IMG/VR virus record: IMGVR_UViG_3300049001_000044
Span: 1-64,000 of that record
Reading direction: 5' to 3' (one strand)
Length of the DNA: 64,000 nucleotides
In this document: in pieces, positions 10,394-28,475 of the stretch
How the letters are laid out: each line of letters starts with the position of its first letter
Numbering within the stretch: the stretch's first letter is position 1
Made by a program: the position numbers and the translations under genes
The notes under the pieces: model-generated
Told to the model about the DNA's origin: nothing
The model's input: only the letters and a program-made list of their open reading frames with translations
The model's database searches: none

Positions 10394-10416
10394 GTTTGCA
10401 CCTTTCTGGTCATCTC

Positions 10417-10492
10417 AGTGAGGCCCAGAGACCTCACTGCTTGTTGTATGTAAGCTGCATCACACTGCAGTGTGGAGGTCTCTGAGCACCTC
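10417..10492. repeat. Dispersed inverted-repeat module
   Basis: GTGAGGCCCAGAGACCTCAC ... GTGGAGGTCTCTGAGCACCTCA. Confidence 0.8.
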
Positions 10493-10808: not shown

Positions 10809-11110
10809 TCTTCTCCTTCCATGTATTCACCCTTGACCCACGATTTCGCGAACTCGAGAGCAGTGTTCGGATCTTCGAAGGGCTTGGTCAGGGCAGGTTT
10901 TTCGTCCATGCACTCGATCGACTGGAACTCGTAGCAGATGGCGTTCCACGGCGATTGGCTCTCGAGGGTGGAGGTGATCAGCACTTGCTTCAACTCGCAG
11001 GTGACGAGGAAACCACCCTCGATCTTGTGCGCGGTAACCACCTTCACATCGTCGACTTCCGGCCTGTCCACTCGAATGCGGACGGTGTAGTCCTCAGGCT
11101 TGATTCCCAT
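10805..11110 (-). CDS. Hypothetical protein
   Basis: Start reassigned to MGIKPED after RBS AAGGGAG. Confidence 0.75.
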   Translation of the reverse strand: MGIKPEDYTVRIRVDRPEVDDVKVVTAHKIEGGFLVTCELKQVLITSTLESQSPWNAICYEFQSIECMDEKPALTKPFEDPNTALEFAKSWVKGEYMEGEE

Positions 11111-11121
11111 TTTTGCTCCCT

Positions 11122-11409
11122 TTATTCCGCGTTGATGGTGCCAGTGGAGACGTAGCGTTCGGCCATCTCGAGGGCGAGTTCCTTGCTCGAGGCCGGCTGC
11201 ACTTGATCGTTGTCTTCGTTTGCGGGGCCGTAGATGACGTTCCACGGTGCACCAACCTCGCTCATGTCCGGGGTAACCAGGGCCGCGCGGTAGTGGTTGA
11301 AGACGTACACTCCGCCGTATTCGCGGTCCTCCTTCGAGATCGTGTTTCGTGCGGCTTCGAGAGCCTTGCGGTGATTTTCATCGCCGTCAACGAGTACAAA
11401 TCCGATCAT
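11122..11409 (-). CDS. Hypothetical protein
   Basis: RBS AAGGAG; 95 aa. Confidence 0.75.
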   Translation of the reverse strand: MIGFVLVDGDENHRKALEAARNTISKEDREYGGVYVFNHYRAALVTPDMSEVGAPWNVIYGPANEDNDQVQPASSKELALEMAERYVSTGTINAE

Positions 11410-11462
11410 GATGTTCTCCTTTGAGAGGAGAGCTAGGGTTTCCCCTAGCTCGTGGATTTGGA

Positions 11463-12461
11463 TTAGTTCGAGGAAGTCAGCAGGTATTCTGCAGGGCGCT
11501 TCCAGTCATCGCCTTCAGCAACCACCTTTGTGACCGAGATCAGGGTGCGGAAGGAGAGTTCCCTTGCGACATCCTTCATTTCGCCGAGGAACTCGAGAGC
11601 TGCTTTCTTGTGCTCCATCTCGTACTCAGGCAGGAATTTCTCGCTCTTGATGATTTCGCCCATCCGCTCGATCTTCTGCGAGGCGTTCATCGAGAGGTCC
11701 ACGGGGATGGAGCGGCTGCGAACTGCTTGGTCGACCTTGTGCATCGGCAGGTTCGAGATGAAGATCACTCCGCCCTTGAACTCGAAGCTGCGAGGGAGAT
11801 CGTCGTCGCCGAAGGATTCAGCATTCCACGAGATGATCCGGCGTTCGTAGGAATCCAACGCTCCCTTGAGGAGGTTGAGAGAGACAGGATCGCGGAGGAC
11901 CGAGTCGCAGTCATCGAAGACGATAATGCGGTTGCGGTTTTCGTAGAGGGTCCGGTAGAGGCCCTTGGCAGTGGAGTAACCCTTGACCACGGTGTAGAGC
12001 TTCCGCGATTCCGAGGGGGAGAGAACCGAGTCGCTGCCCGTTCCCACTTCCACGCTCCCCATGTAATCGGTGGTGTTGATCAAGCCAGCCGCCCCGAGTG
12101 CTTCCGTGACCGTGAAGGTTTTACCCAGACCACCTTCGCCGGTAACCACGAGGGAAGGAGCAGTCCGCCTGGCAACCATCGTCACGAACTTGGTGAGGAA
12201 GTCGAAGCGCTCGTTAATCGTGAAGCGTTCTTCCGGCATTTCCATCACCACTCCCGAGGAATTCTCCCCCACCGTCATCGTGCCTTCCGGCTCGTACACT
12301 TGGGAAACCCCAGCGTCGTTTGCTTTGTTGCAGCGGCCGGAGGTGATCATCTCGATCACGTAGGCTTTCGAACGGGAGGCCGCGAGAATTTGACCGTTGT
12401 ACTTGGCTTCCCACTTGCCGGTGCGTTCATTCAGTTTCAGTTCAGCGATTTTGTTGCTCAT
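11463..12461 (-). CDS. AAA+ ATPase
   Basis: Walker A GEGGLGKT, Walker B IIVFDDCD, sensor IFISN. Confidence 0.9.
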   Translation of the reverse strand: MSNKIAELKLNERTGKWEAKYNGQILAASRSKAYVIEMITSGRCNKANDAGVSQVYEPEGTMTVGENSSGVVMEMPEERFTINERFDFLTKFVTMVARRTAPSLVVTGEGGLGKTFTVTEALGAAGLINTTDYMGSVEVGTGSDSVLSPSESRKLYTVVKGYSTAKGLYRTLYENRNRIIVFDDCDSVLRDPVSLNLLKGALDSYERRIISWNAESFGDDDLPRSFEFKGGVIFISNLPMHKVDQAVRSRSIPVDLSMNASQKIERMGEIIKSEKFLPEYEMEHKKAALEFLGEMKDVARELSFRTLISVTKVVAEGDDWKRPAEYLLTSSN

Positions 12462-12510
12462 CGTGGTTTCCTTCAGCTAGTTAAAGTTGTTGTTGCGTTG
12501 TTGTTTTGTC

Positions 12511-12582
12511 GATAAGGCTATAGTACCATGGTCTGGAGAAATGTACACACTTCTGGAGAAGAAAAGTGTAACAAATGTAACC
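12511..12582 (-). promoter_or_regulatory. Early promoter cassette
   Basis: GATAAGGCTATAGTACCATGG...TGTACAC...GTGTAACAAATGTAAC. Confidence 0.75.
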
Positions 12583-12657
12583 GCGCACCCCCAAAAGGCG
12601 CTATATATAGCGCCTGTTCTAGGATGTTACTAGTAGGAAACTGTTACTAGCAGGAAA

Positions 12658-13218
12658 TTACTGCAGGGAAACTCCCAAGTCTCGATACTCCTTCCTCACC
12701 ATCCCCACTATTTCCCGGAGATTCGCTTTGCCTTTGGGCAACTCCTTGTAGATTTGGATGGGATTTTGGGTTGCAACCCACACCATCTCCGCCATCGTCA
12801 TGTCGTTGCCTCGCTTCTCGTTGCACTTGGAACACGCGCATCGCCCGTTGATGGGGTTGTTCGAACCATCGTAGGACTTAGGGAGGATGTGGTCCCACGT
12901 AAGCATGCGATTGTTGGCGTAGAGGTTCAGTTGGAAGGGCATCACCCTGTCGTTGCGATGCTTCTCAACTTGGAAGTGAGTGGCCTCAACACCGCAGCGA
13001 AAGCACTTCAACTGGACGGAGGTCAGCACCGCAAATCGATCGAAGTCGCGCTTGACGATTTGCTCCATAATCCGCAGCTTCTCTACACCGCGACCGTGGT
13101 TGAGGACGTGGTTGAGAAGATCCAAACCCTCTTGCACTTCCATCTGCGCCAAGTACATCATTTGGACTTTGCTCTTCTTCCCCTTGCGTTCGCGATTGGT
13201 GAGAGGACGTGGGTACAT
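12658..13218 (-). CDS. HNH endonuclease family protein (start uncertain)
   Basis: CFRCG...TWDHILPKSYDGSNNPINGRCACSKCNEKRG. Confidence 0.85.
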   Translation of the reverse strand: MYPRPLTNRERKGKKSKVQMMYLAQMEVQEGLDLLNHVLNHGRGVEKLRIMEQIVKRDFDRFAVLTSVQLKCFRCGVEATHFQVEKHRNDRVMPFQLNLYANNRMLTWDHILPKSYDGSNNPINGRCACSKCNEKRGNDMTMAEMVWVATQNPIQIYKELPKGKANLREIVGMVRKEYRDLGVSLQ

Positions 13219-13225
13219 CGAGTAA

Positions 13226-13408
13226 TCAGTAGTCGTCATCGTGCAGTGCTCCATAATCCGGGTCATGCAAGGCTTCAAAGCTGTCGTCGTACACAGGGCC
13301 GTCAGGGTCGAAGGGTGCGCCTTCAGCGTTGGTGGGTTCGCAGTCGCTGAGGGCGCCGATGTAGGCGGCAGTAATTGCGAGTCCTGCGAGGGCAATAACC
13401 CAAATCAT
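13226..13408 (-). CDS. Small membrane or exported protein
   Basis: Hydrophobic N-terminus, acidic tail; overlaps the NUDIX gene stop. Confidence 0.65.
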   Translation of the reverse strand: MIWVIALAGLAITAAYIGALSDCEPTNAEGAPFDPDGPVYDDSFEALHDPDYGALHDDDY

Positions 13409-13992
13409 AGCAGCACCTTCAACAGATGGGGGATGAGGTCGATGTTGAATTCGCCGAAGGTCTTCACCATCACTTCACGGTAGGGAACCAGCGTTACCAA
13501 AATGCCTGGCTCGATCTCACGAGGATCGCAGCGGAATTCGTCACAGATCATTTTGGCTTCCACGCGATCGGTTACGATGTAGACGTGGATATCCCAGTCC
13601 TCTTCATCCTTGAAGCAACCTACGTAGTCAGGGACAGCAATGAGAGCACGGCCCGTCTCTTCCTGGAACTCGCGGAGTGCAGCATCGAGTGGAGCTTCGC
13701 CATCAGTCTTGCCACCGATAAAGCCCCAATCATCAGTGGTACCGCGACGAGTGGCTGCGAGAACATGACCAGTGACGGGGTCGAACACGACGATCACCAC
13801 CGCAATCTTGATCATCTCTCCGTTGCCGGTCTTCAGGTACTGCTGGATGCAGTCACGAACGCCAGCCGAGTAGCTGTCCTTCAAGTCTGCGTGATGACGA
13901 TAGATGCTGTTTGGATCTTCCCCTTTGTCGAGGAGGTCCTTCGTTACTGCCCAACCCTTGTTGTATTTGATTGCGTGATCGACTGCGCTCAT
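13405..13992 (-). CDS. NUDIX hydrolase with N-terminal extension
   Basis: Nudix box GGKTDGEAPLDAALREFQEETG. Confidence 0.9.
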   Translation of the reverse strand: MSAVDHAIKYNKGWAVTKDLLDKGEDPNSIYRHHADLKDSYSAGVRDCIQQYLKTGNGEMIKIAVVIVVFDPVTGHVLAATRRGTTDDWGFIGGKTDGEAPLDAALREFQEETGRALIAVPDYVGCFKDEEDWDIHVYIVTDRVEAKMICDEFRCDPREIEPGILVTLVPYREVMVKTFGEFNIDLIPHLLKVLL

Positions 13993-15565: not shown

Positions 15566-16192
15566 TTACAGCTTGGCGAATTTCTCGTTCGACATCTTCT
15601 GGAAGTAGCCGCCGACTGCGTTATAGATCGCGGTGCCGATGTCCTTGCAGATGTCTGCGATCAGGTACCATACCAGGTAAACCGGCCAGTAACCGATCCA
15701 CATGACGATCGATGCTTTGTTGTCGCTGGCTTTCGGTGCGATTGCAGCGTTGATGCCTGCCACGCTCATCACCTTCGGATACACGCCGCGGCCTGTCTTG
15801 TTACCCAGATATTCGGCGTAGTCAGCCAGGATTTTCTCGTCGGGGGTTTCGTTCGACTTGAAGTAATCGTTCGGCAGCTTGCGCGAGATCAGGAAGCCGT
15901 CACGGATGTTCGACAGACGTTCGAACTGCGTGCCCAGGAATCGCGACCATTTGAAGCGACCGACGAACAGACCGCCGATGACGTAGGCCAGAGCGATGCC
16001 GATCAGGAAGGTGGGGTTAGTCGCCAGCTCAGGATTTTGCGAGCCGACCAGGTAAACTGCAGCTGCGGTTGCGATGAAGGACAGGAAGCCTTTCTCCAGC
16101 ACAGCGCAGATGAACAGAATCAGGCCAATGACGCTGAGCACGATGTAGAATGCCAGCGGTGCAGCCAGGAAAGTTGCGATTTCAGTGATCAT
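15566..16192 (-). CDS. Multi-pass membrane protein
   Basis: Several hydrophobic segments. Confidence 0.85.
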   Translation of the reverse strand: MITEIATFLAAPLAFYIVLSVIGLILFICAVLEKGFLSFIATAAAVYLVGSQNPELATNPTFLIGIALAYVIGGLFVGRFKWSRFLGTQFERLSNIRDGFLISRKLPNDYFKSNETPDEKILADYAEYLGNKTGRGVYPKVMSVAGINAAIAPKASDNKASIVMWIGYWPVYLVWYLIADICKDIGTAIYNAVGGYFQKMSNEKFAKL

Positions 16193-16220
16193 GAAGTTTT
16201 TCTTTCTATGTAGGGTTGAA

Positions 16221-16655
16221 TTACTTGGCCAGTTCTGCTTGCAGTTGGCGCAGCAGTTGGACGATGCGCTGATCGCCCTCCGTCAGTTGAGCGTTCGGTT
16301 CCACTGCCTTCTTCTCGATGACATCGATGCTGGTCAGGAAGTGGTTGCCTGAATCCGACCGGCACAGAGTTGCGAACTCCGAGCTGTACGTGATCTTGAC
16401 TTCCTTCTGACCTTCCATGGCTTCCTTAACCTTCTTCGCCATGTCTTCGCTTTCTACAGTGAAGTGGAAGGAAGCACCATTCACGCCTGAGCCACCATTC
16501 AGGCCGCCGCGAACGATTTCGCCTTCGTAAGTGGGGCACATGACACCTTGCTTTGCGAGCTTGGTGACCATGCCGATCTTTTCGCCATCACCAGTTTTGA
16601 GGCAGCCAGTCAGCGTGGTTGCTGCAACGATGGCTGCCAGAATCATCTTCTTCAT
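16221..16655 (-). CDS. Lipoprotein
   Basis: Signal peptide with LTGC lipobox. Confidence 0.85.
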   Translation of the reverse strand: MKKMILAAIVAATTLTGCLKTGDGEKIGMVTKLAKQGVMCPTYEGEIVRGGLNGGSGVNGASFHFTVESEDMAKKVKEAMEGQKEVKITYSSEFATLCRSDSGNHFLTSIDVIEKKAVEPNAQLTEGDQRIVQLLRQLQAELAK

Positions 16656-16715
16656 ATTGAAGTCTTTCGTTGTTGAGGTATATGCATTTTATGCTGTGTG
16701 CCTCATAATAAAAAC

Positions 16716-16958
16716 TCACTTCACGCATTGCTTTGAATCTACTTGCTCGCCCTCATCCATGCAGACGTTGTAACCGGTATCACAGACATCCACAGTCGTG
16801 GGCATCATGTACATCATCGTACCTCCACTTCCATTTGGCATGGTCATCGGAATGAATCCACTCTCCAGATGGGAGGAGGTACAGACGAATTCTACATGAG
16901 GACCTTTAGGGGCGCACGAACCTATTAGCAAGGCTAGGGGTAGGATGCACCACTTCAT
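16716..16958 (-). CDS. Small Cys-containing lipoprotein
   Basis: LLIGSC lipobox-like motif; RBS AAGGAG. Confidence 0.7.
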   Translation of the reverse strand: MKWCILPLALLIGSCAPKGPHVEFVCTSSHLESGFIPMTMPNGSGGTMMYMMPTTVDVCDTGYNVCMDEGEQVDSKQCVK

Positions 16959-16967
16959 GTTCTCTCC

Positions 16968-17615
16968 TTACGCTGCTCTTCGTAGCTTGTCAACATTGTG
17001 AAGGATCGCCTTGAGGTTCTCAGATGGATGCGCATCGCCATTCAGCACCACATCCCAATGACACAGTTGGAACCAGTTCTTCTCCACAGTCAACATCGTC
17101 TCCAGCCTACTCAGTGATGCGAACTGCGCTTTGAACGTTGCTGCCTTCAATGCAGCGTAGTCCTCATGGTTTTGGATCACTGCCTTTTCCAAATCTTTTG
17201 CAGCGCGATCCTTGAAGCGTTGCAGACGAAGAGCGGGATCGACGCTCACATACGTCTTCAGATGCAATGCACCCACCTCAATGGCTGGAGCGGCGTAGTG
17301 TTCGATGCCGGACGGCTCAACAATGAGGAAGGCCACACCTTGTGCGAGCTTAGTGTGGAACTCCTGCTTGGTCACGCCATACCTCGCACCGTTAAATTTG
17401 GCCAGCTCAGCGAATTCACCTGCCTCTTCCAGTCGCAGAGACTCTTCCTCGCTGATGAAGAAGTAATCCACACCATCAACTTCACCGGCGCGAGGTGCAC
17501 GGGTGGTAGTACTGATCAGGCAAGGTAGTTTGGCCTCGTCACGAATGAAGTTGAAGAGGTAGGATTTACCGGCGCAGCTCGGCGCGGTCAGAGTTACGAG
17601 GACTTGCTTTTCCAT
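16968..17615 (-). CDS. Guanylate kinase-like NMP kinase
   Basis: P-loop APSCAGKS; STTTRAPRAGEVDGVDYFF signature; start reassigned to MEKQV. Confidence 0.9.
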   Translation of the reverse strand: MEKQVLVTLTAPSCAGKSYLFNFIRDEAKLPCLISTTTRAPRAGEVDGVDYFFISEEESLRLEEAGEFAELAKFNGARYGVTKQEFHTKLAQGVAFLIVEPSGIEHYAAPAIEVGALHLKTYVSVDPALRLQRFKDRAAKDLEKAVIQNHEDYAALKAATFKAQFASLSRLETMLTVEKNWFQLCHWDVVLNGDAHPSENLKAILHNVDKLRRAA

Positions 17616-18367
17616 TTGTCGTTGATTTCCTGTTGAATTTCTTTGACCTCTTCCACGGTGTTGAATGAAAGAGTTGGGTAATTGGTCTCGTACACAGTTG
17701 CTGGTCGACGCCTGTTGTAGAGATAGTGGAAGGCAAAGAGTAGAGATAGCTCTCCGCCAGGGGTGATGTAGCGACCATTTTTCCACAGTGCATGGTGCAG
17801 ATCCCAAAGAGCATCACCTAGAGTGTAGCGATGGAACCTAAACACCGACTGATCGTGGAAACCGGTTGGGTGGCTCTCACCATACTTCGAGAAGTCCGCC
17901 GAGATGATGCGAAGCTTGTCGTCAGAAAGTAGCGTGACGTAGGGATTATCCTTCATCACTGCTGGGATAATGCCTACTCCATTCTGAGGTTGAGCAAGCA
18001 GCTCATCGATGATCTCGCCGTGTGGGAAGAAGACGTCGCCCCATGCAATAACGATCTCGTGATGGATATAGTCTCTGGTGGCCATGAGAGCCTGCAGTAC
18101 GGCATGGCCATCACCCAACCCACTTTCAATTGGGACGTTCACGACGTTCTTGCTCAGCTCTGGATCAAGTTGATCGAAGTACGTAGTCCATTGGTCTTGG
18201 ATGTTGACGTTGGTGACGACGAAGACAGTGCTGAATTTGCTACCCACTTGCTTCAACGTCGTCGTGAGGTTTGGTTCGTCAGTGATGGGGACAAGTGCTT
18301 TTGGCACGTTGCCACCCATCCTTGAACCTTTACCTGCTGCAATGATGTAAAGGTCTGCTTTTGACAT
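17594..18367 (-). CDS. Sugar-phosphate nucleotidyltransferase (GlmU/MobA-like)
   Basis: IIAAGKGSRMGGNVPKAL; LGDGHAV; AWGD. Confidence 0.9.
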   Translation of the reverse strand: MSKADLYIIAAGKGSRMGGNVPKALVPITDEPNLTTTLKQVGSKFSTVFVVTNVNIQDQWTTYFDQLDPELSKNVVNVPIESGLGDGHAVLQALMATRDYIHHEIVIAWGDVFFPHGEIIDELLAQPQNGVGIIPAVMKDNPYVTLLSDDKLRIISADFSKYGESHPTGFHDQSVFRFHRYTLGDALWDLHHALWKNGRYITPGGELSLLFAFHYLYNRRRPATVYETNYPTLSFNTVEEVKEIQQEINDKWKSKSS

Positions 18368-20244
18368 TAGATTGAGAAACTAGGATTGGAGAAAGAGAAG
18401 AGAGCCAGAAGCAGTAGAGCGGTGTCTGCAGGATTCTTGACTTCATGGCAGACGATACGAGGGTTCTGTTTTGCCAGCTCTGCGACTGGTGCATCGTTGC
18501 CACTCTTGAGTTCATCACCAATATACACCACTTTGGCAATTGGCGAAACTCGCTTCAGCACTTCCATCACTGCTACATCTTTGCTGACTTCCTTCTTGTT
18601 GATCTCAATCGTGGTGCGACCAGTAGCTTTCACTTCAAAGGCAGAACCGCAAACATGCTTGACGAGGTTGGTGATAGCAAGCCGATATTCCGGATCGATC
18701 GGCTTGATCGACACCATCACATCTCCGCGGTTTTCGAACTTTGCGGCGGGGATGCCAGCAGCGCACAGACTCGTGGTAACGTTCTCGATTGAGTACGGGC
18801 CTTTTGAATCGAAGCGCGCTGCTTCGTCAAGGCATCGGACAAAGTGGAAGCGGCGCTGGTCTTCAGCAGCAGTGCCGAGAGGGTCGTACGAGTATTCATT
18901 AATGCCTCCATCTGCAAATACAGTGATTGGTAAAGTATCTTCGCCCGTCAGCCAGCTATCAACTTGTGGAAGATGAATAGCCTTGATGGTGTTGCCGGTG
19001 CAAATCATGAATTTCTTGTTCTTCAGACCGTGCGCGATCCTCGATACATTGAAGTTCGACGCGTCCTTGAACGTGTTGCCACGACCAACGAGAGTATCGT
19101 CGTAATCGAAAACGTACGCTTCAGCGTCGAGGACGTCCTTGTAGATCGTCTTCAGCACTGCTGCTGCGAGGTTCTCGGGGATGTGCTTGCTGTCCAGCTT
19201 CTCGCCCGTCAGAGGAGTGCGACCCAGACGGAAGTAGTTGACGGACTGCAGCAGCGGTTCCGCTTTCTCATCGATCGTCTTCATCATGTCGTGACCAGTG
19301 TAGTCCACGATTACGTTGACACGCTTCTCTGGGAAGTATTTTGGAACGATAGTTTGAACAATGTCGCTTGCGGTTTGGTTTGGTGCGTCCTTGTCTGGAA
19401 CTCGATTCATCACCATCAGCACCTTCGCCTTCGATGCTTCGATTGCTTCACGGAAACCAACCGATGCGTAGGTAGGAATGAGCGAAGACCATTGAGTACC
19501 GCTCGACATGATCACCACATCAGCTTCTTCGATTGCCTTCTTGCTTTCTTGGTTGAGATGAGGAACTGCTTCTACACCGTTGGCATCGACGAAGAAGACA
19601 TCGATGATTGGATCATCTGGGTTGTTCCAGGAAACGATGTCGCCTTCGTCTGTGATGCGCTTACCACTCTTCGTGATCGCACCCAGGAACAGAGACTTGT
19701 CATCGTTCACCAGCACGTTGTCAGGGATGCCAAGGAAGTCTGCCATCACCGACGCTGCAATACGTAGTGAGTTATTGTACTTTGCAGCAAGCCCAGCGTA
19801 AACGACGTTCGCAATGCTGAAGTCATCGTAGTCGATCAATTGGGAGCCAGGAGAAGCGAAGAAGAAGTTGATGCCGTCTTGGATGATGTCCATGCGACGG
19901 TCGGCTCGAGGAGAGCAAACCTTCCACATCTCATTCATCTTTTCCCAGCAGTATTGACGGGCTTTGTTGGCCTCAACAGTGAAGCGGTGATCGAGGAAGT
20001 TGTTGATGCAACTCTCTGCTCCACCCGCCAGCTTGTAGAGAGTGGTTTGGTTTTTGCGGACGTCGGATGGACCGAGGATTTTTCCACCCAGCGCTTTGCG
20101 AACGGCACCAGTCGAGAGACCATTGTCGTATGCGTTGACGATGACCTTCACGTCCACACCGCGAAATTCCTTGGTGATCAGAGTGTTGAGGCCGGTTTGC
20201 AGTGCGATAGAGCCGGTGCCACCGGCCAGAATAACGATGTTCAT
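18367..20244 (-). CDS. YvcK/CofD-like domain fused to a HAD IIB (Cof/PMM-type) domain
   Basis: N-terminal VILAGGTGS, IVNAYDNGLSTG, PSDVRK; C-terminal FDYDDTL, TGRTTIEI..SK, YIGD...ND. Confidence 0.85.
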   Translation of the reverse strand: MNIVILAGGTGSIALQTGLNTLITKEFRGVDVKVIVNAYDNGLSTGAVRKALGGKILGPSDVRKNQTTLYKLAGGAESCINNFLDHRFTVEANKARQYCWEKMNEMWKVCSPRADRRMDIIQDGINFFFASPGSQLIDYDDFSIANVVYAGLAAKYNNSLRIAASVMADFLGIPDNVLVNDDKSLFLGAITKSGKRITDEGDIVSWNNPDDPIIDVFFVDANGVEAVPHLNQESKKAIEEADVVIMSSGTQWSSLIPTYASVGFREAIEASKAKVLMVMNRVPDKDAPNQTASDIVQTIVPKYFPEKRVNVIVDYTGHDMMKTIDEKAEPLLQSVNYFRLGRTPLTGEKLDSKHIPENLAAAVLKTIYKDVLDAEAYVFDYDDTLVGRGNTFKDASNFNVSRIAHGLKNKKFMICTGNTIKAIHLPQVDSWLTGEDTLPITVFADGGINEYSYDPLGTAAEDQRRFHFVRCLDEAARFDSKGPYSIENVTTSLCAAGIPAAKFENRGDVMVSIKPIDPEYRLAITNLVKHVCGSAFEVKATGRTTIEINKKEVSKDVAVMEVLKRVSPIAKVVYIGDELKSGNDAPVAELAKQNPRIVCHEVKNPADTALLLLALFSFSNPSFSI

Positions 20245-20312
20245 GTTTGCTCCTTTAAAGTGGTTGGCCCATCAGCTTAGCTTCCGGGCCCGTGCACTTA
20301 TTTACGCCAAGT

Positions 20313-20927
20313 TCAATCTGCTTTTTTCTGATCGAAGTCGAATTCAGTCGCCACGAAGTTGAAGTAGGCACACAGCTCGCAGCTTACTGGATCAGCAAGG
20401 TTCTTACCCGCGTTGACGCGAACTTGGGCGCCTTGCAGAGTGTTGAGGACTGCTGCGGCAACTGGGTTCTCACTGATGAGATCGGTGATTTGACCAACAC
20501 GGTGAGGGAAGTACGCGTCGAATTCCAGCTCGTGCTTCGATCCAAACGCAGCGTAATCCAGCTTGGCGTGCCCAAAGGACAGCAGTTTGGTACCTTGCAG
20601 ATAGGTAGTGCGAAGGATGGTGTCCGCTCCATCCAAGATGTCGATCGCAACGATGAACGACTCCATCTCCTGCAGTTTAAGCAGACCTTTGAAGGCCACG
20701 TTGGTGACATCATCTTGGAAGTCGATGATAGTGCTATTCAACATGCCCATGTCCACCCTACGTTGTTCAAGTCCATCAACGCGGATGGCCTGTGCGGACA
20801 GTTGATCGCTCACGTCCAGCTTCTGCTTCTCCTCGTTGAGGAAGCGAACACGAAAACGATTCTTCAGATTGGGAGCACGAATGCCAACACCACCTATTCC
20901 TGGGATTGGATTACCGATTGACGCCAT
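20313..20927 (-). CDS. Tail-tube (gp19)-like protein, tentative
   Basis: LKNRFRVRF...QAIRVD...TIIDFQDD...LQG..L..F...LDY pattern resembles tube-like proteins of large myoviruses; start uncertain. Confidence 0.5.
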   Translation of the reverse strand: MASIGNPIPGIGGVGIRAPNLKNRFRVRFLNEEKQKLDVSDQLSAQAIRVDGLEQRRVDMGMLNSTIIDFQDDVTNVAFKGLLKLQEMESFIVAIDILDGADTILRTTYLQGTKLLSFGHAKLDYAAFGSKHELEFDAYFPHRVGQITDLISENPVAAAVLNTLQGAQVRVNAGKNLADPVSCELCAYFNFVATEFDFDQKKAD

Positions 20928-22050
20928 AGTTGACAGTGTCCTTGATGAGGTTAACAAATTGCGAGCAGTAAGTGTTGGCATCGAAGTTAATGGCCTTCAG
21001 CTGCGCAGAGAGAATTTCGTTGCGTAGGTTTGGATCAGTCTTCAAGAGCATGATCTTCTCGCTGACTTCTTTCCGCTCGCCCACGTACAGGAAGTCAGCG
21101 AGTTCTTTGTCCACGCCATACACGCGGCGTAGCTGGTCCAGATCCTTATCGATGAAGGTGACGACGTTCGACCAAATCGACTCATACGCTCGTTGGGCCA
21201 TGTCGTTGATTTGCTCGTAGTAGGGGTCACCAATCACGATGTGAGCCATTGCCTTGTTCATCTTTGGCAGCATCTCATCGTACTTGATGGGGCCTGTGAA
21301 GGTTGGAGTACGAGTCACGCCAAGCAAATGCTTCTCTTCGAAGTCTTCCAACTTGATCTTGCCGAACATCTCCACCGAGATTTCTTCTGGATGGTTGAAG
21401 TAGAACTTCACCATCTTCTTCGAGCGCTTGCCACCACGCATGGTTCCACCATACGAGAGATCGACTTCAGGGGTCGGATTGATGGGCAGCTGTTCATTAA
21501 GGCAGGGGAACTGCTCGAACGGGAAGTGGATCGCAGTCGATGGGGTGACTTCGTTCTTGCTCAGTTTCTCCAGCACCTTGTTCACGTCGTAGGGCTGGCT
21601 GAGATAGATGATGTCGTTACGGGTAATGTTCAAATCTTTCTCTGACCAATTACCAGCCCATGGCTTCCTACTTACTGACGGCCACACTTGCTTGAGAGTC
21701 AGGGATGGATCACAGTAGACGTAGAAGACTGGTCCTTTGAACTCGTTGATGATGACATAGTTCAGGAGCTGCTCAGGGTCTTCTGCTCCACCGAAGAAGT
21801 TGACGTTGCCGTTCAGCACAATAAGGGCCTGAGCACGAAGACCATCTGCGAGAGTAGCCGGATCGCTAAGATCGAACCACTCGTATTCAGGGAGTAGGTT
21901 ATCCTTCTTCAGGATTTTGGTGTAGATTTGGACTTTCGCTCCACCGCCCTGCAGCATTTTGATGATGCTTCGCGCTTCACCATTGCCGCCTGACGTATCG
22001 TTCGCATTGAACGAGATGCGCGAGCCCAGTTTAATTACTGCTACCTGCAT
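20911..22050 (-). CDS. bgt: T4 DNA beta-glucosyltransferase-like glycosyltransferase
   Basis: LIVLNGNVNFFGG, QVWPSVSRKPW, YGGTMRGGKRSKKM, PTFTG and IVIGD match remembered T4 BGT motifs (NFFGG, WPNVKNRPW, YGGSFRSGQR). Confidence 0.85.
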   Translation of the reverse strand: MQVAVIKLGSRISFNANDTSGGNGEARSIIKMLQGGGAKVQIYTKILKKDNLLPEYEWFDLSDPATLADGLRAQALIVLNGNVNFFGGAEDPEQLLNYVIINEFKGPVFYVYCDPSLTLKQVWPSVSRKPWAGNWSEKDLNITRNDIIYLSQPYDVNKVLEKLSKNEVTPSTAIHFPFEQFPCLNEQLPINPTPEVDLSYGGTMRGGKRSKKMVKFYFNHPEEISVEMFGKIKLEDFEEKHLLGVTRTPTFTGPIKYDEMLPKMNKAMAHIVIGDPYYEQINDMAQRAYESIWSNVVTFIDKDLDQLRRVYGVDKELADFLYVGERKEVSEKIMLLKTDPNLRNEILSAQLKAINFDANTYCSQFVNLIKDTVNYGVNR

Positions 22051-22258
22051 AGTTGTTCCTTATGATGAGGGTGAGCATCAGGATGATCGTCACCAAGTGA
22101 AGGAATGGAACACTTAGCAAGATGATCAAACTGATCATGATTGGGTTTTTGAAGTTGTACCCGAATTTTGGGTGATGAGGTCCGCGTAAGTCCTCCTTAA
22201 CGGCCAACATTGTCAGGCCAAGAAAGATTGTACCACAAATGAAGAGATAAGCAACCAT
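22031..22258 (-). CDS. Small membrane protein
   Basis: Two hydrophobic helices. Confidence 0.7.
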   Translation of the reverse strand: MVAYLFICGTIFLGLTMLAVKEDLRGPHHPKFGYNFKNPIMISLIILLSVPFLHLVTIILMLTLIIRNNYAGSSN

Positions 22259-22263
22259 AAATA
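22256..22263 (+). promoter_or_regulatory. T4-type late promoter-like CATAAATA
   Basis: TAAATA core 26 nt upstream of the 22289 gene; same core at 32483, 49566 (+) and 32446, 56979, 60712, 62807 (-). Confidence 0.55.
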
Positions 22264-22288
22264 TGGGATCAATATCCTGGAGATCATC

Positions 22289-22675
22289 ATGAAACTTTCC
22301 GAACTACTTGAATCAGACGACGATAACCTGCGCAAATTCCACAAGAGCCTAGGTGACGAGATCAGAGCAGGGGCCGCAGCCAGAAAGGCGACGCACGATG
22401 CGATGTTCAAAGACCACAAATGGAGATACGACGAAGGCGACATGATCATGTCGAACAAGACGGGTAAGGTCTACAAAATCACAGCACGGATTTCGCAATA
22501 CTATACGCCTAGGGACGAGAAGTTTAAACCCACCGGTCCCAAGCAGCTTGTTCCTGCCTACCGCTACAAAGCTGGTGAAGAGGAAGGCACGCTGCTTGAG
22601 CCAAAAATTACCGATGGGATGTTCACCCTTATGACTAAGGGTAAGAACGTCAAGACATCTCCTGACGAGGATTAA
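22289..22675 (+). CDS. Hypothetical protein with capsid-targeting-like N-terminus (MKLSELLES)
   Basis: Late promoter, RBS GGAG, L-x-E site. Confidence 0.8.
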   Translation: MKLSELLESDDDNLRKFHKSLGDEIRAGAAARKATHDAMFKDHKWRYDEGDMIMSNKTGKVYKITARISQYYTPRDEKFKPTGPKQLVPAYRYKAGEEEGTLLEPKITDGMFTLMTKGKNVKTSPDED

Positions 22676-23247
22676 TCCGCTGTTGCCTCCGCGAGGATGT
22701 CTTCTTTCGAACGGAAGCTGCCGTCCTCAGCAGTGACGCAGATGATCTTCTTGTCGGGGAATGCGGAGCGGTTGAATGCATCGATGAAGAGCAGTTGTTC
22801 TTGAGCTCGCTTCTCAACACTGCCCAGGCTCAGGCCATCATCGACGAAGTGCTTGCTCTTGGAGAAATCTTCGACTAGGAGAATCAGGCGGGTGTCGATG
22901 TCTTCTTCCACCCCATAGATTTCTTCAAGACCGAAGACATAGCTGCCGTCATAGCCGCGGTACATGGGAGCGTACACGCATTCACCAAGGTGAGCGCGAT
23001 CAAAGATTAATGGGGTCTCCATCCCAGCACCAAGCAGTTCGAACATGGCGACAAAGCCATCATACTGGTACAGGAATTCTGGTGACTGCTCCAGGCCGTC
23101 TTCTTCCTTGATTTGCACATAGGAATCCAAACGCTTTGGCTTGGAGTAGTGGATGACGGTGTGGAAACCTTCCTTGTGTTGGATGCCCTCGATGAGGGAG
23201 GACTTGCCAAGGCGATCAAGTCCTTCGATGATGTAGTTAAATGGCAT
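22672..23247 (-). CDS. dNMP (thymidylate-type) kinase
   Basis: IIEGLDRLGKSS P-loop; IFDRAHLGECVY. Confidence 0.88.
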   Translation of the reverse strand: MPFNYIIEGLDRLGKSSLIEGIQHKEGFHTVIHYSKPKRLDSYVQIKEEDGLEQSPEFLYQYDGFVAMFELLGAGMETPLIFDRAHLGECVYAPMYRGYDGSYVFGLEEIYGVEEDIDTRLILLVEDFSKSKHFVDDGLSLGSVEKRAQEQLLFIDAFNRSAFPDKKIICVTAEDGSFRSKEDILAEATAD

Positions 23248-23288
23248 ATGAGTATTATATACGGGCGAGACGTAAAAGTAATCTCAAA

Positions 23289-23774
23289 TCAGTCAAAGCT
23301 GTCTTTGACACCGAAGATGCTCTTTGACAGCTCAGATGGCTCAGGGGTATCCTTGTTAAGGAATGTCCACCTTGTCGCTGTTCCATAGGGGTGCGTCAGC
23401 TGGCCACGGTAGTGTTCACCATATTTTGACAGCATTGCCTTCGCAATGCGCTTGTAGAGCTTGACACGAGACGGCTCCTGGTTAACCGCAAGGAACGTGA
23501 ACGATGGCCAATCACCTTTAGCAGTGACTAGATGATTGATGATAGCGACGACAGTAGAGAACACTTCGATTGAATCACCAGTACCAAGAATCTCTTCGCT
23601 CTTACCACCCCAACCTTGGGCAAATCGAATATCAAAGGGGTCTCTCTTCGAGTCACGATCGGCCTTGAACCGATACTGTTTTCCATTGATTTCGAAATTA
23701 GCAGCAAATTCGAAATCCGAATAGTAGCTAACGTCAAAGTGGGAAGGCTTGTCAAAAATTTCGTCTATTCGCAT
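23289..23774 (-). CDS. Hypothetical protein (EPSRVKLY family)
   Basis: Paralog of the partial ORF at 3..188. Confidence 0.8.
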   Translation of the reverse strand: MRIDEIFDKPSHFDVSYYSDFEFAANFEINGKQYRFKADRDSKRDPFDIRFAQGWGGKSEEILGTGDSIEVFSTVVAIINHLVTAKGDWPSFTFLAVNQEPSRVKLYKRIAKAMLSKYGEHYRGQLTHPYGTATRWTFLNKDTPEPSELSKSIFGVKDSFD

Positions 23775-23792
23775 GTTTAAAAAGTACCTTGC

Positions 23793-24041
23793 TTAAAAAT
23801 CCTGCTCCATCCAATCGAAAGCATCCATTGGGATAATCGCTGGGTGGTCAGTGGGTGGCTCACGTAGCGCTCGGCTTTTCGCCTGAATTTCTGCGAGCTT
23901 AGACCGCGTTGCGGTCGATGGAGTATGACACTCGACGTGCTCGACAACCCATGCGTTGCCCACCTTCTCGCACACTCCTTCGTAGGCTGGCACTGTCACG
24001 TTACACTTCGCGCACTGCTTTGCGTACTTATTCTGCATCAT
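23793..24041 (-). CDS. Hypothetical zinc-binding protein
   Basis: NKYAKQCAKC...WVVEHVEC; RBS AAGGAG. Confidence 0.75.
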   Translation of the reverse strand: MMQNKYAKQCAKCNVTVPAYEGVCEKVGNAWVVEHVECHTPSTATRSKLAEIQAKSRALREPPTDHPAIIPMDAFDWMEQDF

Positions 24042-24047
24042 CTCTCC

Positions 24048-24392
24048 TTAAAATGGAATGTCATTGTCGATCAAATCAGAGATGTCCACTCCATTATCCA
24101 CACATCTCTTTTCTAACTTCTCCACCCTACTCTCCAAACTTTCAATCACGTTGTGAAGGTGGTGCCGGTAGTTCTTGCCATCGTCTGCCGGATTGAAGAC
24201 CTTCTCCCAGAGATTGGCGCGATCATAGAAGATCTTTGCGAACTTCGAATCATTAGTGATGAGGTCAGCGGCGTGGCGAAGATCATAGGCGCATCTCCTG
24301 CCCGCCTTTACTAACAGTTCGACCTGTTCTCTCTGCGCCGCCTCAGGTGAGTAGTCCTCCGGCTTAAAAACTCTGTTGACGTACCAGTTCAT
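24048..24392 (-). CDS. Hypothetical protein
   Basis: Overlap-coupled; ends DIPF. Confidence 0.75.
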   Translation of the reverse strand: MNWYVNRVFKPEDYSPEAAQREQVELLVKAGRRCAYDLRHAADLITNDSKFAKIFYDRANLWEKVFNPADDGKNYRHHLHNVIESLESRVEKLEKRCVDNGVDISDLIDNDIPF

Positions 24393-24820
24393 TTCACCAG
24401 CAGTTGCAGTTGGTTGCTATACTTCTTCACACGATAGGCGGAGTCGGCCATAATCGATTCGGTCAAGTTACAGAGGGTGTCATGGATCTTCACCTCCTTT
24501 GAGTAGTGATACTCCTTGACACGGTAGATGTAGGCGTCGTAGGCTTCGCCTTCCACCTTTGTCAGAGCCACCACAAACTTCGTGATGTCCTTACCCACTG
24601 CCGCCTTCAGTTCTTCTTCGGTCAGATCGGTGTCTTCCAAGATGTCATGAAGGATTGCGACAGCGAGGAGGGCTCGGTTGCCATCACCCCACTTTCGACG
24701 AATGGAATCAACCACTGCGCTGAGGTGGTACATGTAGGGATGGTCGCCATACATCTGGCCGGCGTGCCACTTCTCTGCTAGCGCATAGGCGATGTCAAAT
24801 ACATCACGAGGTTTGGACAT
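24389..24820 (-). CDS. Small HD-domain hydrolase (Mesh1/SpoT-hydrolase-like)
   Basis: AYALAEKWHAGQ..PYMYHL..V; AILHDILEDT; VKIHDTLCN. Confidence 0.88.
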   Translation of the reverse strand: MSKPRDVFDIAYALAEKWHAGQMYGDHPYMYHLSAVVDSIRRKWGDGNRALLAVAILHDILEDTDLTEEELKAAVGKDITKFVVALTKVEGEAYDAYIYRVKEYHYSKEVKIHDTLCNLTESIMADSAYRVKKYSNQLQLLVK

Positions 24821-27722: not shown

Positions 27723-28475
27723 TCACTTTGCGTGGCCCACGGGATCAACGAGGTGGTAGTGACGAGCGTAAACGTGGAGAGAACCGACTTGCCAGATCAG
27801 ATCACCAACCTCGACGTTCAGTTCTGCTGCGAGCTTCTCTTGCACGTGGCGTTGCCATGCACGATCGTTCTTGTAGCCGAAGACTGCGTCATTCGAGCGC
27901 ATGTTCACGATCGATATCAGCTTACCACCACGAATGAGGTACTGAACTGTGTTGGTGCACATGAAGTCAGAGCGGCCGTTCAGGTTGTAGTCCAGCCACA
28001 TCGAAGGACGAGTGTAGATGGCGATGGCACGGCGTGACTCTGGATTTTTCTTCAGCTCTTGAACGACTTGTTCATACTGCGAAGGGGCCAGAGACAGGAG
28101 ACGAGTGGAAGCGCTGGTCTCACGTGCTTCATACTCATTCATCATGAAGCCGTTCTCATGCGAGTAGAGGGTCCAGCCGTAGTTGGAGTTGATGAAGCCA
28201 TCTTTGTCAGCGACGGCTTTCCAAATCTGTGGAGCACCACCAGGGATGTCATTGACGTTCAGCGACATGGAGTTGTACCACGCCTCTTCACGTGCGACAT
28301 AGTCCCAGTTCACTTCACCGAAGATCGCTTCCTCATCAGCGAGAAACGTTGCACCGACAATTTCGATGGTGGTGTTGCCAGTCAGGGAAGTCATGCTACC
28401 TTCTCTGTTGACAGATGTGAACTGACCTGCTGCGAGCAGGTCTTCAAATTGCTTGCGGATATCTTTGGTTTGCAT
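27723..28475 (-). CDS. dCMP hydroxymethylase (T4 gp42-like; thymidylate synthase fold)
   Basis: SNYG, SRRA, DFMCT, MRSNDAVFGYKND; final Asp indicates dCMP specificity as in gp42. Confidence 0.85.
   Translation of the reverse strand: MQTKDIRKQFEDLLAAGQFTSVNREGSMTSLTGNTTIEIVGATFLADEEAIFGEVNWDYVAREEAWYNSMSLNVNDIPGGAPQIWKAVADKDGFINSNYGWTLYSHENGFMMNEYEARETSASTRLLSLAPSQYEQVVQELKKNPESRRAIAIYTRPSMWLDYNLNGRSDFMCTNTVQYLIRGGKLISIVNMRSNDAVFGYKNDRAWQRHVQEKLAAELNVEVGDLIWQVGSLHVYARHYHLVDPVGHAK

What the first reader, a model, noticed from the sequence alone, without database searches (positions are those of the whole stretch)
16968..23247. Cytosine hypermodification cluster that may attach a phage-made sugar
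A T4 BGT-like glycosyltransferase shares a minus-strand run with a sugar-1-P nucleotidyltransferase, a YvcK/CofD-HAD fusion and a guanylate kinase-like enzyme. A dNMP kinase is 0.6 kb away and a gp42-like hydroxymethylase is at 27723. T4 BGT uses host UDP-glucose and needs no such helpers, so the phage may build its own NDP-sugar. The RB69-type arabinosylation loci are a known analogy, but this enzyme set differs.
Basis: partly seen in the sequence, partly recalled or inferred. Interest (0 to 1): 0.7.

Follow-up and report, generated by a model that had tools for sequence, protein, structure and literature searches.

The report
Phage hmC glycosylation with sugar-activation cassette
A 343-kb soil jumbo phage carries a T4-like set of genes for making and glycosylating 5-hydroxymethylcytosine, and a previously undescribed two-gene sugar-nucleotide cassette sits beside the transferase, so its DNA may carry a sugar or sugar-phosphate the phage activates itself.

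Summary
On the minus strand lie a guanylate-kinase-like gene, a GlmU-N-like sugar-1-phosphate nucleotidyltransferase (NT), a YvcK/GlmR-like plus HAD-IIB fusion, a T4 BGT-family glycosyltransferase and a TMK-like kinase. A genuine gp42-type dCMP hydroxymethylase lies 4.5 kb further on.

New here:
- The HAD domain is closest to PMM/alpha-PGM-type phosphohexomutases.
- The other domain is YvcK/GlmR-type, not CofD-type.
- The order BGT / YvcK-HAD / NT holds in about 30 viral contigs and in Ralstonia phage RsoM2USA.
- The YvcK-HAD + NT pair is a mobile cassette. It also sits in bacterial polysaccharide loci, always beside a glycosyltransferase and sometimes fused to one.
- Related jumbo phages keep gp42 / kinase / BGT / GK but lack the cassette, so GK belongs to nucleotide supply, not to sugar chemistry.

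Best reading (about 0.5): hexose-6-P is converted to hexose-1-P and then to an NDP-hexose, which the BGT-like enzyme puts on 5hmC. The sugar is unknown and could be plain glucose. A CofC/CofD-style phospho-sugar transfer is a live rival. The RB69-type arabinose and 5-hydroxycytosine chemistry is excluded. I found no literature on this cassette. I rate it a new variant of a known kind.

The parts
16968..17615 (-). Guanylate-kinase-like P-loop kinase (about 215 aa). It is the only PF00625 gene in the genome and probably serves (d)GMP phosphorylation for nucleotide supply rather than the sugar cassette.
   Evidence: PF00625 59.6 bits, TIGR03263 76 bits (below the 160 cut-off), and the GMP-binding half aligns with solved guanylate kinases. 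It is the only copy in the genome. It is retained next to BGT in phages that lack the cassette.
17594..18367 (-). Sugar-1-phosphate nucleotidyltransferase (257 aa, GlmU-N-terminal-like). Its base and sugar specificity are unknown.
   Evidence: PF12804 47.5 bits. GlmU models are the best NCBIfam and PDB hits. The AF2 model has pLDDT 95, and Foldseek gives TM 0.76-0.81 to GlmU uridyltransferase domains, RmlA, GalU and HddC. K23 and the WGD motif are invariant in the family.
19138..20244 (-). N-terminal YvcK/GlmR (UPF0052)-type domain of the 625-aa fusion (aa 1 to about 369).
   Evidence: PF01933 88 bits. Sequence and profile searches of PDB hit only YvcK-type structures. Fold TM is 0.80 to 2hzb/2o2z against 0.56-0.64 to FbiA/CofD. 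Many polar residues are invariant, including the GGTG loop, D40, STG and GPSDxRKN.
18367..19137 (-). C-terminal HAD-IIB domain of the fusion (aa about 370-625). It is nearest PMM/alpha-phosphoglucomutase-type mutases, and the catalytic motifs are intact.
   Evidence: DxDxT (D380, D382, T384), K555 and GDE..GND (576-584) are invariant. Profile against PDB: alpha-PGM 4bnd 2.9e-6, PMM 7myv 4.5e-3, T6PP 8e-3. Foldseek ranks 4bnd first, then PMM1/2 and T6PP.
20313..20981 (-). 222-aa ORF of unknown function between the BGT-like gene and the fusion. It is not conserved in relatives and is probably not part of the system.
   Evidence: No Pfam, PHROG or NCBIfam hit. No fold or feature lead. Absent from all but one related locus.
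20911..22050 (-). T4 beta-glucosyltransferase-family (GT63) glycosyltransferase, 379 aa.
   Evidence: PF09198 62 bits, phrog_7922 2e-50, PDB 1bgt 3.5e-34. The T4 residues E22, D100, R191, R195 and R269 are invariant across the clade, E272 is nearly so, and S189 is replaced by T.
22031..22258 (-). 75-aa predicted membrane protein that overlaps the start of the BGT-like gene. Its role is unknown.
   Evidence: Hydrophobic sequence. Weak phrog_18969 'membrane protein' hit. Found only in the closest relative.
22672..23247 (-). TMK-like P-loop nucleotide kinase (191 aa), a candidate hm-dCMP/dNMP kinase.
   Evidence: Walker A motif with the EGxDxxGKS pattern. phrog_761 1.6e-4 and PF02223 0.01. Conserved just upstream of BGT in most related phages. 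40% identical to RsoM2USA ORF6.
27723..28475 (-). gp42-type dCMP hydroxymethylase, the source of 5hm-dCMP.
   Evidence: PDB 1b49 E=7e-68. The alignment with T4 gp42 and the phage's own ThyA shows the catalytic Cys, Asp at the ThyA-N177 position and Asp at the ThyA-D169 position. A canonical ThyA lies elsewhere in the genome.

Best explanation
The window carries a T4-like cytosine replacement pathway. It consists of a gp42-type dCMP hydroxymethylase, a TMK-like kinase and a BGT-family glycosyltransferase, with a dCTPase-family gene, a dCMP deaminase and ThyA elsewhere in the genome. A two-gene accessory cassette sits between the transferase and a guanylate kinase.

The cassette is a YvcK/GlmR-like plus PMM-like HAD fusion, followed by a GlmU-N-like nucleotidyltransferase. 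It most likely turns a hexose-6-phosphate from host central metabolism into hexose-1-phosphate (HAD domain) and then into an NDP-hexose (NT). The YvcK/GlmR-like domain would act as a second nucleotidyltransferase or as a product sensor. The BGT-like enzyme would then transfer that sugar to 5hmC in phage DNA.

Shown: the domain identities, the intact catalytic motifs, the conserved synteny, and the occurrence of the same pair beside glycosyltransferases in bacteria.

Inferred: the order of the reactions, that DNA-borne 5hmC is the acceptor, and that the cassette feeds this particular transferase. The sugar is not identified. Glucose, GlcNAc and mannose are the obvious candidates.
For: - gp42-type enzyme with dCMP and hydroxymethyl signatures.
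- BGT-family membership with catalytic and UDP-binding residues conserved.
- The NT has the full sugar-1-P nucleotidyltransferase fold.
- The HAD-IIB motifs are intact, and the nearest relatives are alpha-PGM and PMM mutases.
- YvcK/GlmR relatives are reported as sugar-1-P uridylyltransferases that bind UDP-GlcNAc (PMC10128056, PMC13046274).
- BGT sits immediately upstream and NT immediately downstream of the fusion in 33 of 34 viral loci, down to 30% identity, with gp42-like nearby in 23. The isolate RsoM2USA has the same layout.
- The same NT + YvcK-HAD pair lies in bacterial Wzx/Wzy polysaccharide loci directly after a GT2. It lies beside a GT1 in a Steroidobacteraceae MAG and is fused to a GT2 in SAR86.
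- One contig has a YvcK-HAD-NT triple fusion.
- Cassette-linked BGTs form one clade apart from T4-type BGTs.
- Supporting genes for dCTP exclusion lie elsewhere in the genome.
Against: - If the separate NT makes the NDP-sugar, the YvcK-like domain has no necessary role. Yet it, not the HAD domain, is the constant partner of the NT and a glycosyltransferase.
- Two near-complete related genomes have the BGT-like gene but no cassette anywhere, so the transferase can work without it.
- HAD-IIB mutases and phosphatases cannot be told apart from sequence or fold here.
- The window's BGT-like protein is acidic (pI 5.6, against 9.05 for T4 BGT), which is unusual for a non-specific DNA-binding enzyme.
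- No chemical data exist for this phage or for RsoM2USA. Only assembled contigs are held for the source sample.
Confidence: 0.5

Rival explanations
1. Phosphodiester decoration by CofC/CofD logic. The NT activates a sugar-1-phosphate (supplied by the HAD mutase) as an NDP-sugar. The CofD-superfamily YvcK-like domain then transfers the sugar-1-phosphate to a hydroxyl and releases NMP. The acceptor would be the glucose that the BGT-like enzyme puts on 5hmC from host UDP-glucose, or 5hmC itself. The product would be a phospho-sugar-bearing cytosine.
For: - The domain belongs to the CofD/YvcK superfamily (PF01933; fold TM about 0.6 to FbiA/CofD).
- NT and the CofD-like gene are always adjacent, once fused, as cofC/cofD-type partners would be.
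- The constant triad is glycosyltransferase + YvcK-like + NT, with the HAD domain dispensable. Under this model each of the three has its own role.
- The cassette is optional on top of a working gp42/BGT set, as expected for an extra decoration.
- From my own knowledge, not tested here: Bacillus phage SP-15 DNA carries a phosphate-linked sugar acid, which is a precedent.
Against: - By sequence and profile the domain matches only YvcK-type structures, never CofD/FbiA, and its fold is closer to YvcK (0.80 against about 0.6).
- Characterised YvcK/GlmR proteins are reported as uridylyltransferases, not phospho-alcohol transferases (PMC10128056).
- The fusion is acidic, with no sign of a DNA-binding surface.
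- The guanylate kinase that would recycle GMP is not linked to the cassette.
Confidence: 0.2
2. Ordinary outcome. The cassette is an auxiliary metabolic module that only boosts UDP-glucose (Glc-6-P to Glc-1-P to UDP-Glc), so that a 343-kb genome with about 51% G+C can be fully glucosylated independently of host pgm/galU. Virion DNA would then carry plain beta-glucosyl-hmC, as in T4. This is a sub-case of the best explanation. Its 0.25 overlaps that explanation's 0.5 and is not to be added to it.
For: - The transferase keeps every T4 BGT catalytic and UDP-contact residue examined.
- The nearest solved relative of the HAD domain is an alpha-phosphoglucomutase.
- GalU-type UDP-glucose pyrophosphorylases are among the top structural matches of the NT.
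- Sister phages manage without the cassette.
- No tailoring enzyme (epimerase, dehydratase or aminotransferase) is linked to the cassette in phages.
Against: - The pair is a distinct family far from GalU and Pgm. In bacteria it is tied to one dedicated glycosyltransferase inside polysaccharide loci, which is unexpected for a housekeeping donor.
- Cassette-linked BGTs form their own clade, and the lineage that lost the cassette sits on a long BGT branch, which hints at a change of donor.
- The known ligand of YvcK/GlmR relatives is UDP-GlcNAc, not UDP-glucose (PMC10128056).
Confidence: 0.25
3. The cassette is unrelated to DNA. As in bacteria, it would feed glycosylation of a surface polymer, or of phage or host proteins, and its position beside the BGT-like gene would be incidental or reflect shared regulation.
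For: - Every cellular homologue sits in envelope polysaccharide or glycolipid loci.
- One viral contig (L058) has the pair with no BGT-like gene within 10 kb.
- The cassette is dispensable in sister phages.
Against: - Adjacency to the BGT-like gene holds in 33 of 34 viral loci across 30-77% identity, and the cassette co-distributes with one BGT clade.
- The surrounding genes are nucleotide and DNA metabolism genes, not envelope genes.
- Even in L058 the neighbour is a DNA C5-methyltransferase.
Confidence: 0.08

Closest known systems
T4 gp42 / beta-glucosyltransferase system (glucosyl-5hmC)
   Same: Homologous dCMP hydroxymethylase (E=7e-68) and a GT63-family transferase with the T4 catalytic set. 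Gene 42 and b-gt are neighbours in T4 too. A dCTPase-family gene, a dCMP deaminase and ThyA are also present.
   Different: T4 relies on host UDP-glucose and has no sugar-activation genes. Here a YvcK-HAD fusion and an NT follow the transferase. The transferase is only 28% identical to T4 BGT, is acidic, and belongs to a separate clade. No alpha-GT was detected, although that search had no positive control.
RB69 / DLP3 / HY126 arabinosyl-5-hydroxycytosine clusters (PMC13326640)
   Same: The logic is the same: a TS homologue, a TMK-like nucleotide kinase, DNA glycosyltransferase(s), and a phage-encoded route from a sugar phosphate to an NDP-sugar that includes a HAD-family enzyme and a nucleotidyltransferase.
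   Different: Those phages make 5hoC with a D169N TS homologue. They use arabinose-5-P isomerase, a kinase-NT fusion, a HAD phosphatase and GT4-type transferases. Here the TS homologue keeps Asp169, there is no SIS isomerase in the genome, the transferase is BGT-type, and the HAD domain is PMM-like and fused to a YvcK domain.
GlmR/YvcK accessory uridylyltransferase (PMC10128056, PMC13046274)
   Same: Same fold (TM 0.80) and the same N-terminal GGTG and D-x-G-S-S/T-G motifs. The first catalytic Asp is invariant.
   Different: It is fused to a HAD-IIB domain, or to a GT2 in other lineages. It is always paired with a separate NT. The second catalytic Asp is Asn. It scores far below the TIGR01826 cut-off. 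It sits in glycan or DNA-modification contexts, not in the yvcJ-glmR-yvcL operon.
CofC/CofD (FbiD/FbiA) of F420 biosynthesis
   Same: An adjacent pair of a nucleotidyltransferase and a CofD-superfamily protein. This offers a mechanistic template: NDP-X plus a hydroxyl gives a phosphodiester plus NMP.
   Different: There is no sequence-level match to CofD/FbiA, and the fold similarity is lower than to YvcK. The NT is a sugar-1-P type, not a CofC type. There is no F420 context.
HAD-type alpha-phosphoglucomutase (PDB 4bnd) and eukaryotic phosphomannomutases
   Same: Nearest solved relatives of the C-terminal domain by both profile and fold, with shared HAD-IIB motifs.
   Different: About 16-18% identity. 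It is fused to a YvcK-like domain. Mutase and phosphatase activity could not be distinguished.

Membership tests
T4 beta-glucosyltransferase family (GT63, PF09198) | Sequence membership above the curated cut-off | tested here: met
   PF09198 62.2 bits against a cut-off of 27. phrog_7922 2e-50. PDB 1bgt 3.5e-34 over residues 74-355.
T4 beta-glucosyltransferase family (GT63, PF09198) | Catalytic base Asp100, Glu22, and UDP contacts Arg191, Arg195, Arg269 and Glu272 | tested here: met
   The alignment with T4 b-gt shows E25, D114, R205, R209 and R287 invariant and E290 nearly invariant. S189 is replaced by T.
T4 beta-glucosyltransferase family (GT63, PF09198) | Transfers glucose from UDP-glucose to 5hmC in duplex DNA | not testable with these tools
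   Needs an enzyme assay. The acidic pI (5.6 against 9.05 for T4) is noted.
gp42-type dCMP hydroxymethylase | Catalytic Cys (T4 C148) and Asp at T4 D179 (ThyA N177), which selects dCMP | tested here: met
   Both are present in the phmmer alignment to 1b49 and in alignment A6 with T4 gp42 and the phage's own ThyA.
5-hydroxy-dCMP synthase (RB69 gp48 type, PMC13326640) | Asn at the position of E. coli ThyA Asp169 (D169N signature) | tested here: not met
   The window protein and all aligned relatives keep Asp in the RSxD motif.
RB69-type arabinose pathway | Arabinose-5-phosphate isomerase (SIS domain) encoded by the phage | tested here: not met
   No PF01380 match in the complete 343-kb record, while all 14 control genomes gave a match.
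YvcK/GlmR (UPF0052) | Fold and N-terminal nucleotide-binding and catalytic motifs | tested here: met
   Foldseek TM 0.80 to 2hzb/2o2z. Profile E=5e-20 to 2ppv. The GGTG loop and D40 are invariant.
YvcK/GlmR (UPF0052) | Equivalog-level membership (TIGR01826) and the paired catalytic Asp-Asp | tested here: not met
   69 bits against a cut-off of 196. The second Asp is Asn41 in at least 90% of members. It is a distinct subfamily.
CofD / FbiA (2-phospho-L-lactate transferase) | Sequence relationship to characterised CofD/FbiA | tested here: not met
   Single-sequence and profile searches of PDB return only YvcK-type chains. The fold TM to 3c3d and 6uw7 is 0.56-0.64.
HAD superfamily, subfamily IIB | Motifs I-IV (DxDxT, S/T, K, GDxxxxD/ND) and the IIB cap | tested here: met
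   D380, D382, T384, K555 and G576-D577-E578...N583-D584 are invariant. TIGR01484 hit. Fold matches to IIB members.
PMM/alpha-PGM-type HAD phosphomutase | Mutase rather than phosphatase chemistry | tested here: inconclusive
   Mutases rank first by profile (4bnd 2.9e-6) and by fold, but trehalose-6-P phosphatases follow closely.
Sugar-1-phosphate nucleotidyltransferase (GlmU-N / RmlA / GalU type) | G-x-G-[ST]-R loop, catalytic Lys, and a full fold that includes the sugar-binding subdomain | tested here: met
   AAGKGSRM loop, invariant K23, and TM 0.76-0.81 over all 257 residues to GlmU uridyltransferase domains.
Sugar-1-phosphate nucleotidyltransferase (GlmU-N / RmlA / GalU type) | Base and sugar specificity | tested here: inconclusive
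   The residue aligned with GlmU Gln76 (my memory of its role in uracil recognition) varies across the family. No specificity could be read.
Guanylate kinase | P-loop and GMP-binding motifs; equivalog score | tested here: inconclusive
   PF00625 59.6 bits, with the N-terminal half aligning to many solved guanylate kinases. TIGR03263 gives only 76 bits against a cut-off of 160, and the C-terminal half is divergent.

The most novel reading that the evidence does not exclude
The YvcK/CofD-superfamily domain is itself a transferase. It would move a phage-activated sugar-1-phosphate onto glucosyl-hmC (or onto hmC) and release NMP, giving phage DNA a phosphodiester-linked sugar on cytosine. The same uncharacterised NT + YvcK-like pair would then be a widespread sugar-phosphate decorating system of bacterial surface glycans.
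Probability: 0.17. Interest if true: 0.9.

Novelty: new variant of a known kind. Interest (0 to 1): 0.64.

Why it matters
Phage DNA hypermodifications decide which restriction, CRISPR and glycosylase defences can act, and they supply enzymes for epigenomic tools. Only a few phage-encoded sugar-activation routes for DNA glycosylation are known: arabinose in RB69-like phages and a UDP-galactose mutase in RL38J1.

This cassette would add another route, built from an enzyme pair that nobody appears to have characterised. That pair is also common in bacterial polysaccharide loci, including those of many gut Firmicutes. Working it out in the phage would therefore also annotate hundreds of bacterial glycan clusters and give the YvcK/GlmR superfamily a second biochemical context.

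Two things make the question directly testable. One cultured phage, Ralstonia phage RsoM2USA, has the whole set. Near-complete sister genomes lack the cassette and can serve as natural controls.

Tried and rejected
- **CofC/CofD with GMP recycling.** My first idea was that the guanylate kinase recycles GMP released by a CofD-like transfer. I dropped that link. GK stays next to BGT in phages with no cassette and is missing from many phages that have it.
- **Guanine-specific NT.** I inferred this from a Glu at the GlmU Gln76 position. I rejected it because the residue varies across the family.
- **BGT fused to YvcK-HAD in L047.** This was a bug in my ORF script. The ORF listing shows two separate ORFs.
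- **Complex prediction of YvcK-HAD with NT.** It gave no answer, with a score of 0.00, and counts neither for nor against binding.
- **Sequencing runs.** Only the source soil metagenome holds the sequence, and only as contigs. No read-level signal of modification can be had.
- **Promoter and terminator scan of 16000-24500.** The counts were no higher than in shuffled sequence.
- **The 222-aa ORF.** No family, fold or feature lead, and it is not conserved.
- **Literature searches.** Searches for CofD/YvcK with phage DNA modification, with polysaccharide loci and with jumbo phages found nothing on this cassette. I wondered whether pneumococcal Gtp3 (CDP-2-glycerol pathway) belongs to this family, but could not check it from the held papers.
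- **Megablast of the region against phage records.** No match.

Full report
**Setting.** The window is the first 64 kb of a 343,229-bp IMG/VR virus record with direct terminal repeats, estimated complete. It was assembled from a soil metagenome. There is no nucleotide-level match among deposited phages. At protein level the nearest are Ralstonia jumbo phage RsoM2USA (343.8 kb) and an uncultured 462-kb phage.

**Observation.** The minus-strand run 16968-23247 holds the following genes.

| Coordinates | Gene | Key evidence |
|---|---|---|
| 16968-17615 | guanylate-kinase-like | PF00625 4e-16; likely start is the ATG at 17615 |
| 17594-18367 | NTP_transf_3 / GlmU-like nucleotidyltransferase (NT) | PF12804 3e-12 |
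| 18367-20244 | 625-aa CofD/YvcK + HAD-IIB fusion | PF01933 6e-25 |
| 20313-20981 | unconserved 222-aa ORF | no family hit |
| 20911-22050 | T4 BGT-family transferase | phrog_7922 2e-50 |
| 22031-22258 | 75-aa membrane ORF | weak phrog_18969 hit |
| 22672-23247 | TMK-like P-loop kinase | weak phrog_761 hit |

Further along the same strand are an HD phosphohydrolase, a helicase, a NinX-like gene and the TS homologue at 27723-28475.

**Which base.** The TS homologue matches T4 dCMP hydroxymethylase at E=7e-68. I aligned it with T4 gp42 and the phage's own canonical ThyA. It keeps the catalytic Cys, Asp at the ThyA-N177 position (dCMP specificity) and Asp at the ThyA-D169 position.
- A 2026 study showed that RB69-type homologues with Asn at position 169 make 5-hydroxy-dCMP, the base that is arabinosylated (PMC13326640).
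- That signature is absent here, and the genome has no SIS-type arabinose-5-P isomerase. The chemistry is the 5hmC type, not the RB69 type.
- The rest of the genome supplies a canonical ThyA, a PF08761-family NTP pyrophosphatase (the family I recall as holding T4 gp56), and a dCMP deaminase.

**The transferase.** It aligns with T4 BGT at 3.5e-34. T4 residues E22, D100, R191, R195 and R269 are invariant across 18 family members, and E272 is nearly so. It is a member of the family. Its donor sugar and its DNA substrate cannot be read from sequence. It is acidic (pI 5.6, against 9.05 for T4 BGT).

**The helpers.**
- An AF2 model of the fusion (pLDDT 89.5) shows two domains.
- The N-terminal domain matches YvcK/GlmR structures (TM 0.80) better than FbiA/CofD (0.56-0.64). 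Sequence and profile searches of PDB find only YvcK-type chains.
- The C-terminal domain has all the HAD-IIB motifs invariant. Its nearest relative is the HAD-type alpha-phosphoglucomutase 4bnd, followed by phosphomannomutases and then trehalose-6-P phosphatases.
- The NT model (pLDDT 95) superposes over its whole length on sugar-1-P nucleotidyltransferases such as GlmU-N, RmlA, GalU and HddC.
- YvcK/GlmR proteins are currently described as accessory GlcNAc-1-P uridylyltransferases that bind UDP-GlcNAc (PMC10128056, PMC13046274).
- All three elements therefore point to sugar-nucleotide metabolism.

**Comparative genomics.**
- The fusion has more than 400 full-length homologues, many on contigs of 330-370 kb.
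- In 34 viral loci with 77-30% identity, the BGT-like gene lies within the flank in 33, almost always immediately upstream. The NT follows in all loci not cut by a contig end. The gp42-like gene lies within 10 kb in 23, and GK in 18.
- RsoM2USA has the NT (ORF486), the fusion (ORF1), BGT (ORF2), the kinase (ORF6) and a TS homologue with the same signatures (ORF10).
- The NT + fusion pair also occurs in bacteria. In a Steroidobacteraceae MAG it sits next to a GT1 and sulfotransferases, with the NT 65% identical to the phage NT. In many Lachnospiraceae and Oscillospiraceae it sits inside Wzx/Wzy polysaccharide loci directly after a GT2.
- In SAR86 and other lineages the YvcK-like domain is fused to a GT2, without a HAD domain and with the NT next door.
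- One contig has a YvcK-HAD-NT triple fusion.
- The constant unit is therefore glycosyltransferase + YvcK-like domain + NT. The HAD domain is an optional addition.

**The cassette is accessory.**
- A BGT-centred scan found related jumbo phages with gp42-like / helicase / kinase / BGT / GK but no fusion or NT.
- Whole-record searches of two of them, 100% and 94% complete, found none anywhere.
- GK therefore belongs to the nucleotide cassette. It is the only guanylate-kinase gene in the genome. I do not count it as part of the sugar chemistry.
- On a quick maximum-likelihood tree, cassette-linked BGTs fall in one 38-member clade (SH-aLRT 92) that excludes T4-type and other cassette-less BGTs. 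The cassette-less jumbo lineage is nested inside that clade on a long stem, which suggests a loss. This is a quick tree, some of the rows scored as cassette-less rest on flanks of only 8 kb, and the result is suggestive only.

**Mechanism.**
- The best-supported reading is donor supply: hexose-6-P to hexose-1-P to NDP-hexose, then BGT-like transfer to 5hmC.
- Its weak point is that the YvcK-like domain has no necessary role, although it is the most constant element.
- The main rival borrows CofC/CofD logic and gives each protein a role, with a phospho-sugar transferred to the glycosylated base. But the domain is YvcK-type, not CofD-type.
- A plain UDP-glucose booster that ends in ordinary glucosyl-hmC remains quite possible.
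- A role unrelated to DNA is unlikely given the synteny.

**Novelty.** I found no paper that describes this cassette in phages or bacteria. Phage-encoded sugar activation for DNA glycosylation is a known kind of system, and this would be a new variant with a new enzyme set. RsoM2USA and the natural cassette-less relatives offer a direct experimental route.

Noticed in passing
window 22289-22675 (+): A 128-aa ORF on the opposite strand fills the 0.4-kb gap between the 75-aa membrane gene and the TMK-like kinase. It has no family match, so it is unclear whether it is a real gene.
   Followed up: partly
window 27723-28475: The gp42-like enzyme has an insertion of about 24 residues (aa about 108-131) that T4 gp42 lacks. 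A relative (L039) has a longer one at the same place.
   Followed up: no
window 12658-13992: An HNH endonuclease (12658-13395) and a NUDIX hydrolase (13405-13992) lie about 3 kb beyond the GK-like gene. A NUDIX enzyme could act on nucleotide sugars or dNTPs.
   Followed up: no
window 29519-31536: Two adjacent paralogous genes (338 and 334 aa) both hit phrog_12810, a family of unknown function.
   Followed up: no
window 32517-35363 (+): A 948-aa virion-structural-type protein whose middle domain matches tail-fibre and head-decoration PHROGs. It marks the switch to the plus strand.
   Followed up: no
window 20911-22050: The BGT-like protein is acidic (pI 5.6), while T4 BGT is basic (9.05). The family median is 6.8.
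   Followed up: partly
L058 5768-11773 (IMGVR_UViG_3300032007_000006, 352 kb): A jumbo-phage contig carries NT + YvcK-HAD beside a Dcm-type C5 DNA methyltransferase, an RNA ligase 2 and Lar. There is no BGT-like gene within 10 kb. This is a different DNA-modification context for the same cassette.
   Followed up: partly
L006/L007 (Steroidobacteraceae MAG JBJMWM010000041.1) 10001-12674: The closest cellular copy of the cassette. The NT is 65% and the fusion 46% identical to the phage's. It sits beside a GT1 (EryCIII-like), sulfotransferases and transposases, which suggests recent exchange between these phages and soil Gammaproteobacteria.
   Followed up: partly
L025 9044-11955 (SAR86 MAG): A 730-aa protein fuses a GT2 glycosyltransferase to the YvcK/CofD-like domain, with the NT immediately downstream. 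Such fusions are common in marine metagenomes; one cluster has 453 member sequences.
   Followed up: partly
L085, L089, L092, L093, L101: Sister jumbo phages keep gp42-like / helicase / kinase / BGT / GK but lack the cassette. A metallophosphatase and a 159-aa ORF flank BGT instead, and their BGT sits on a long branch.
   Followed up: partly
G000 184536-185177 (outside the window): An SDR-type NDP-sugar dehydratase/epimerase-like gene (PF16363, 83 bits, partial) lies elsewhere in the same phage genome. RsoM2USA is annotated with a GDP-mannose 4,6-dehydratase. A link to the cassette was not examined.
   Followed up: no
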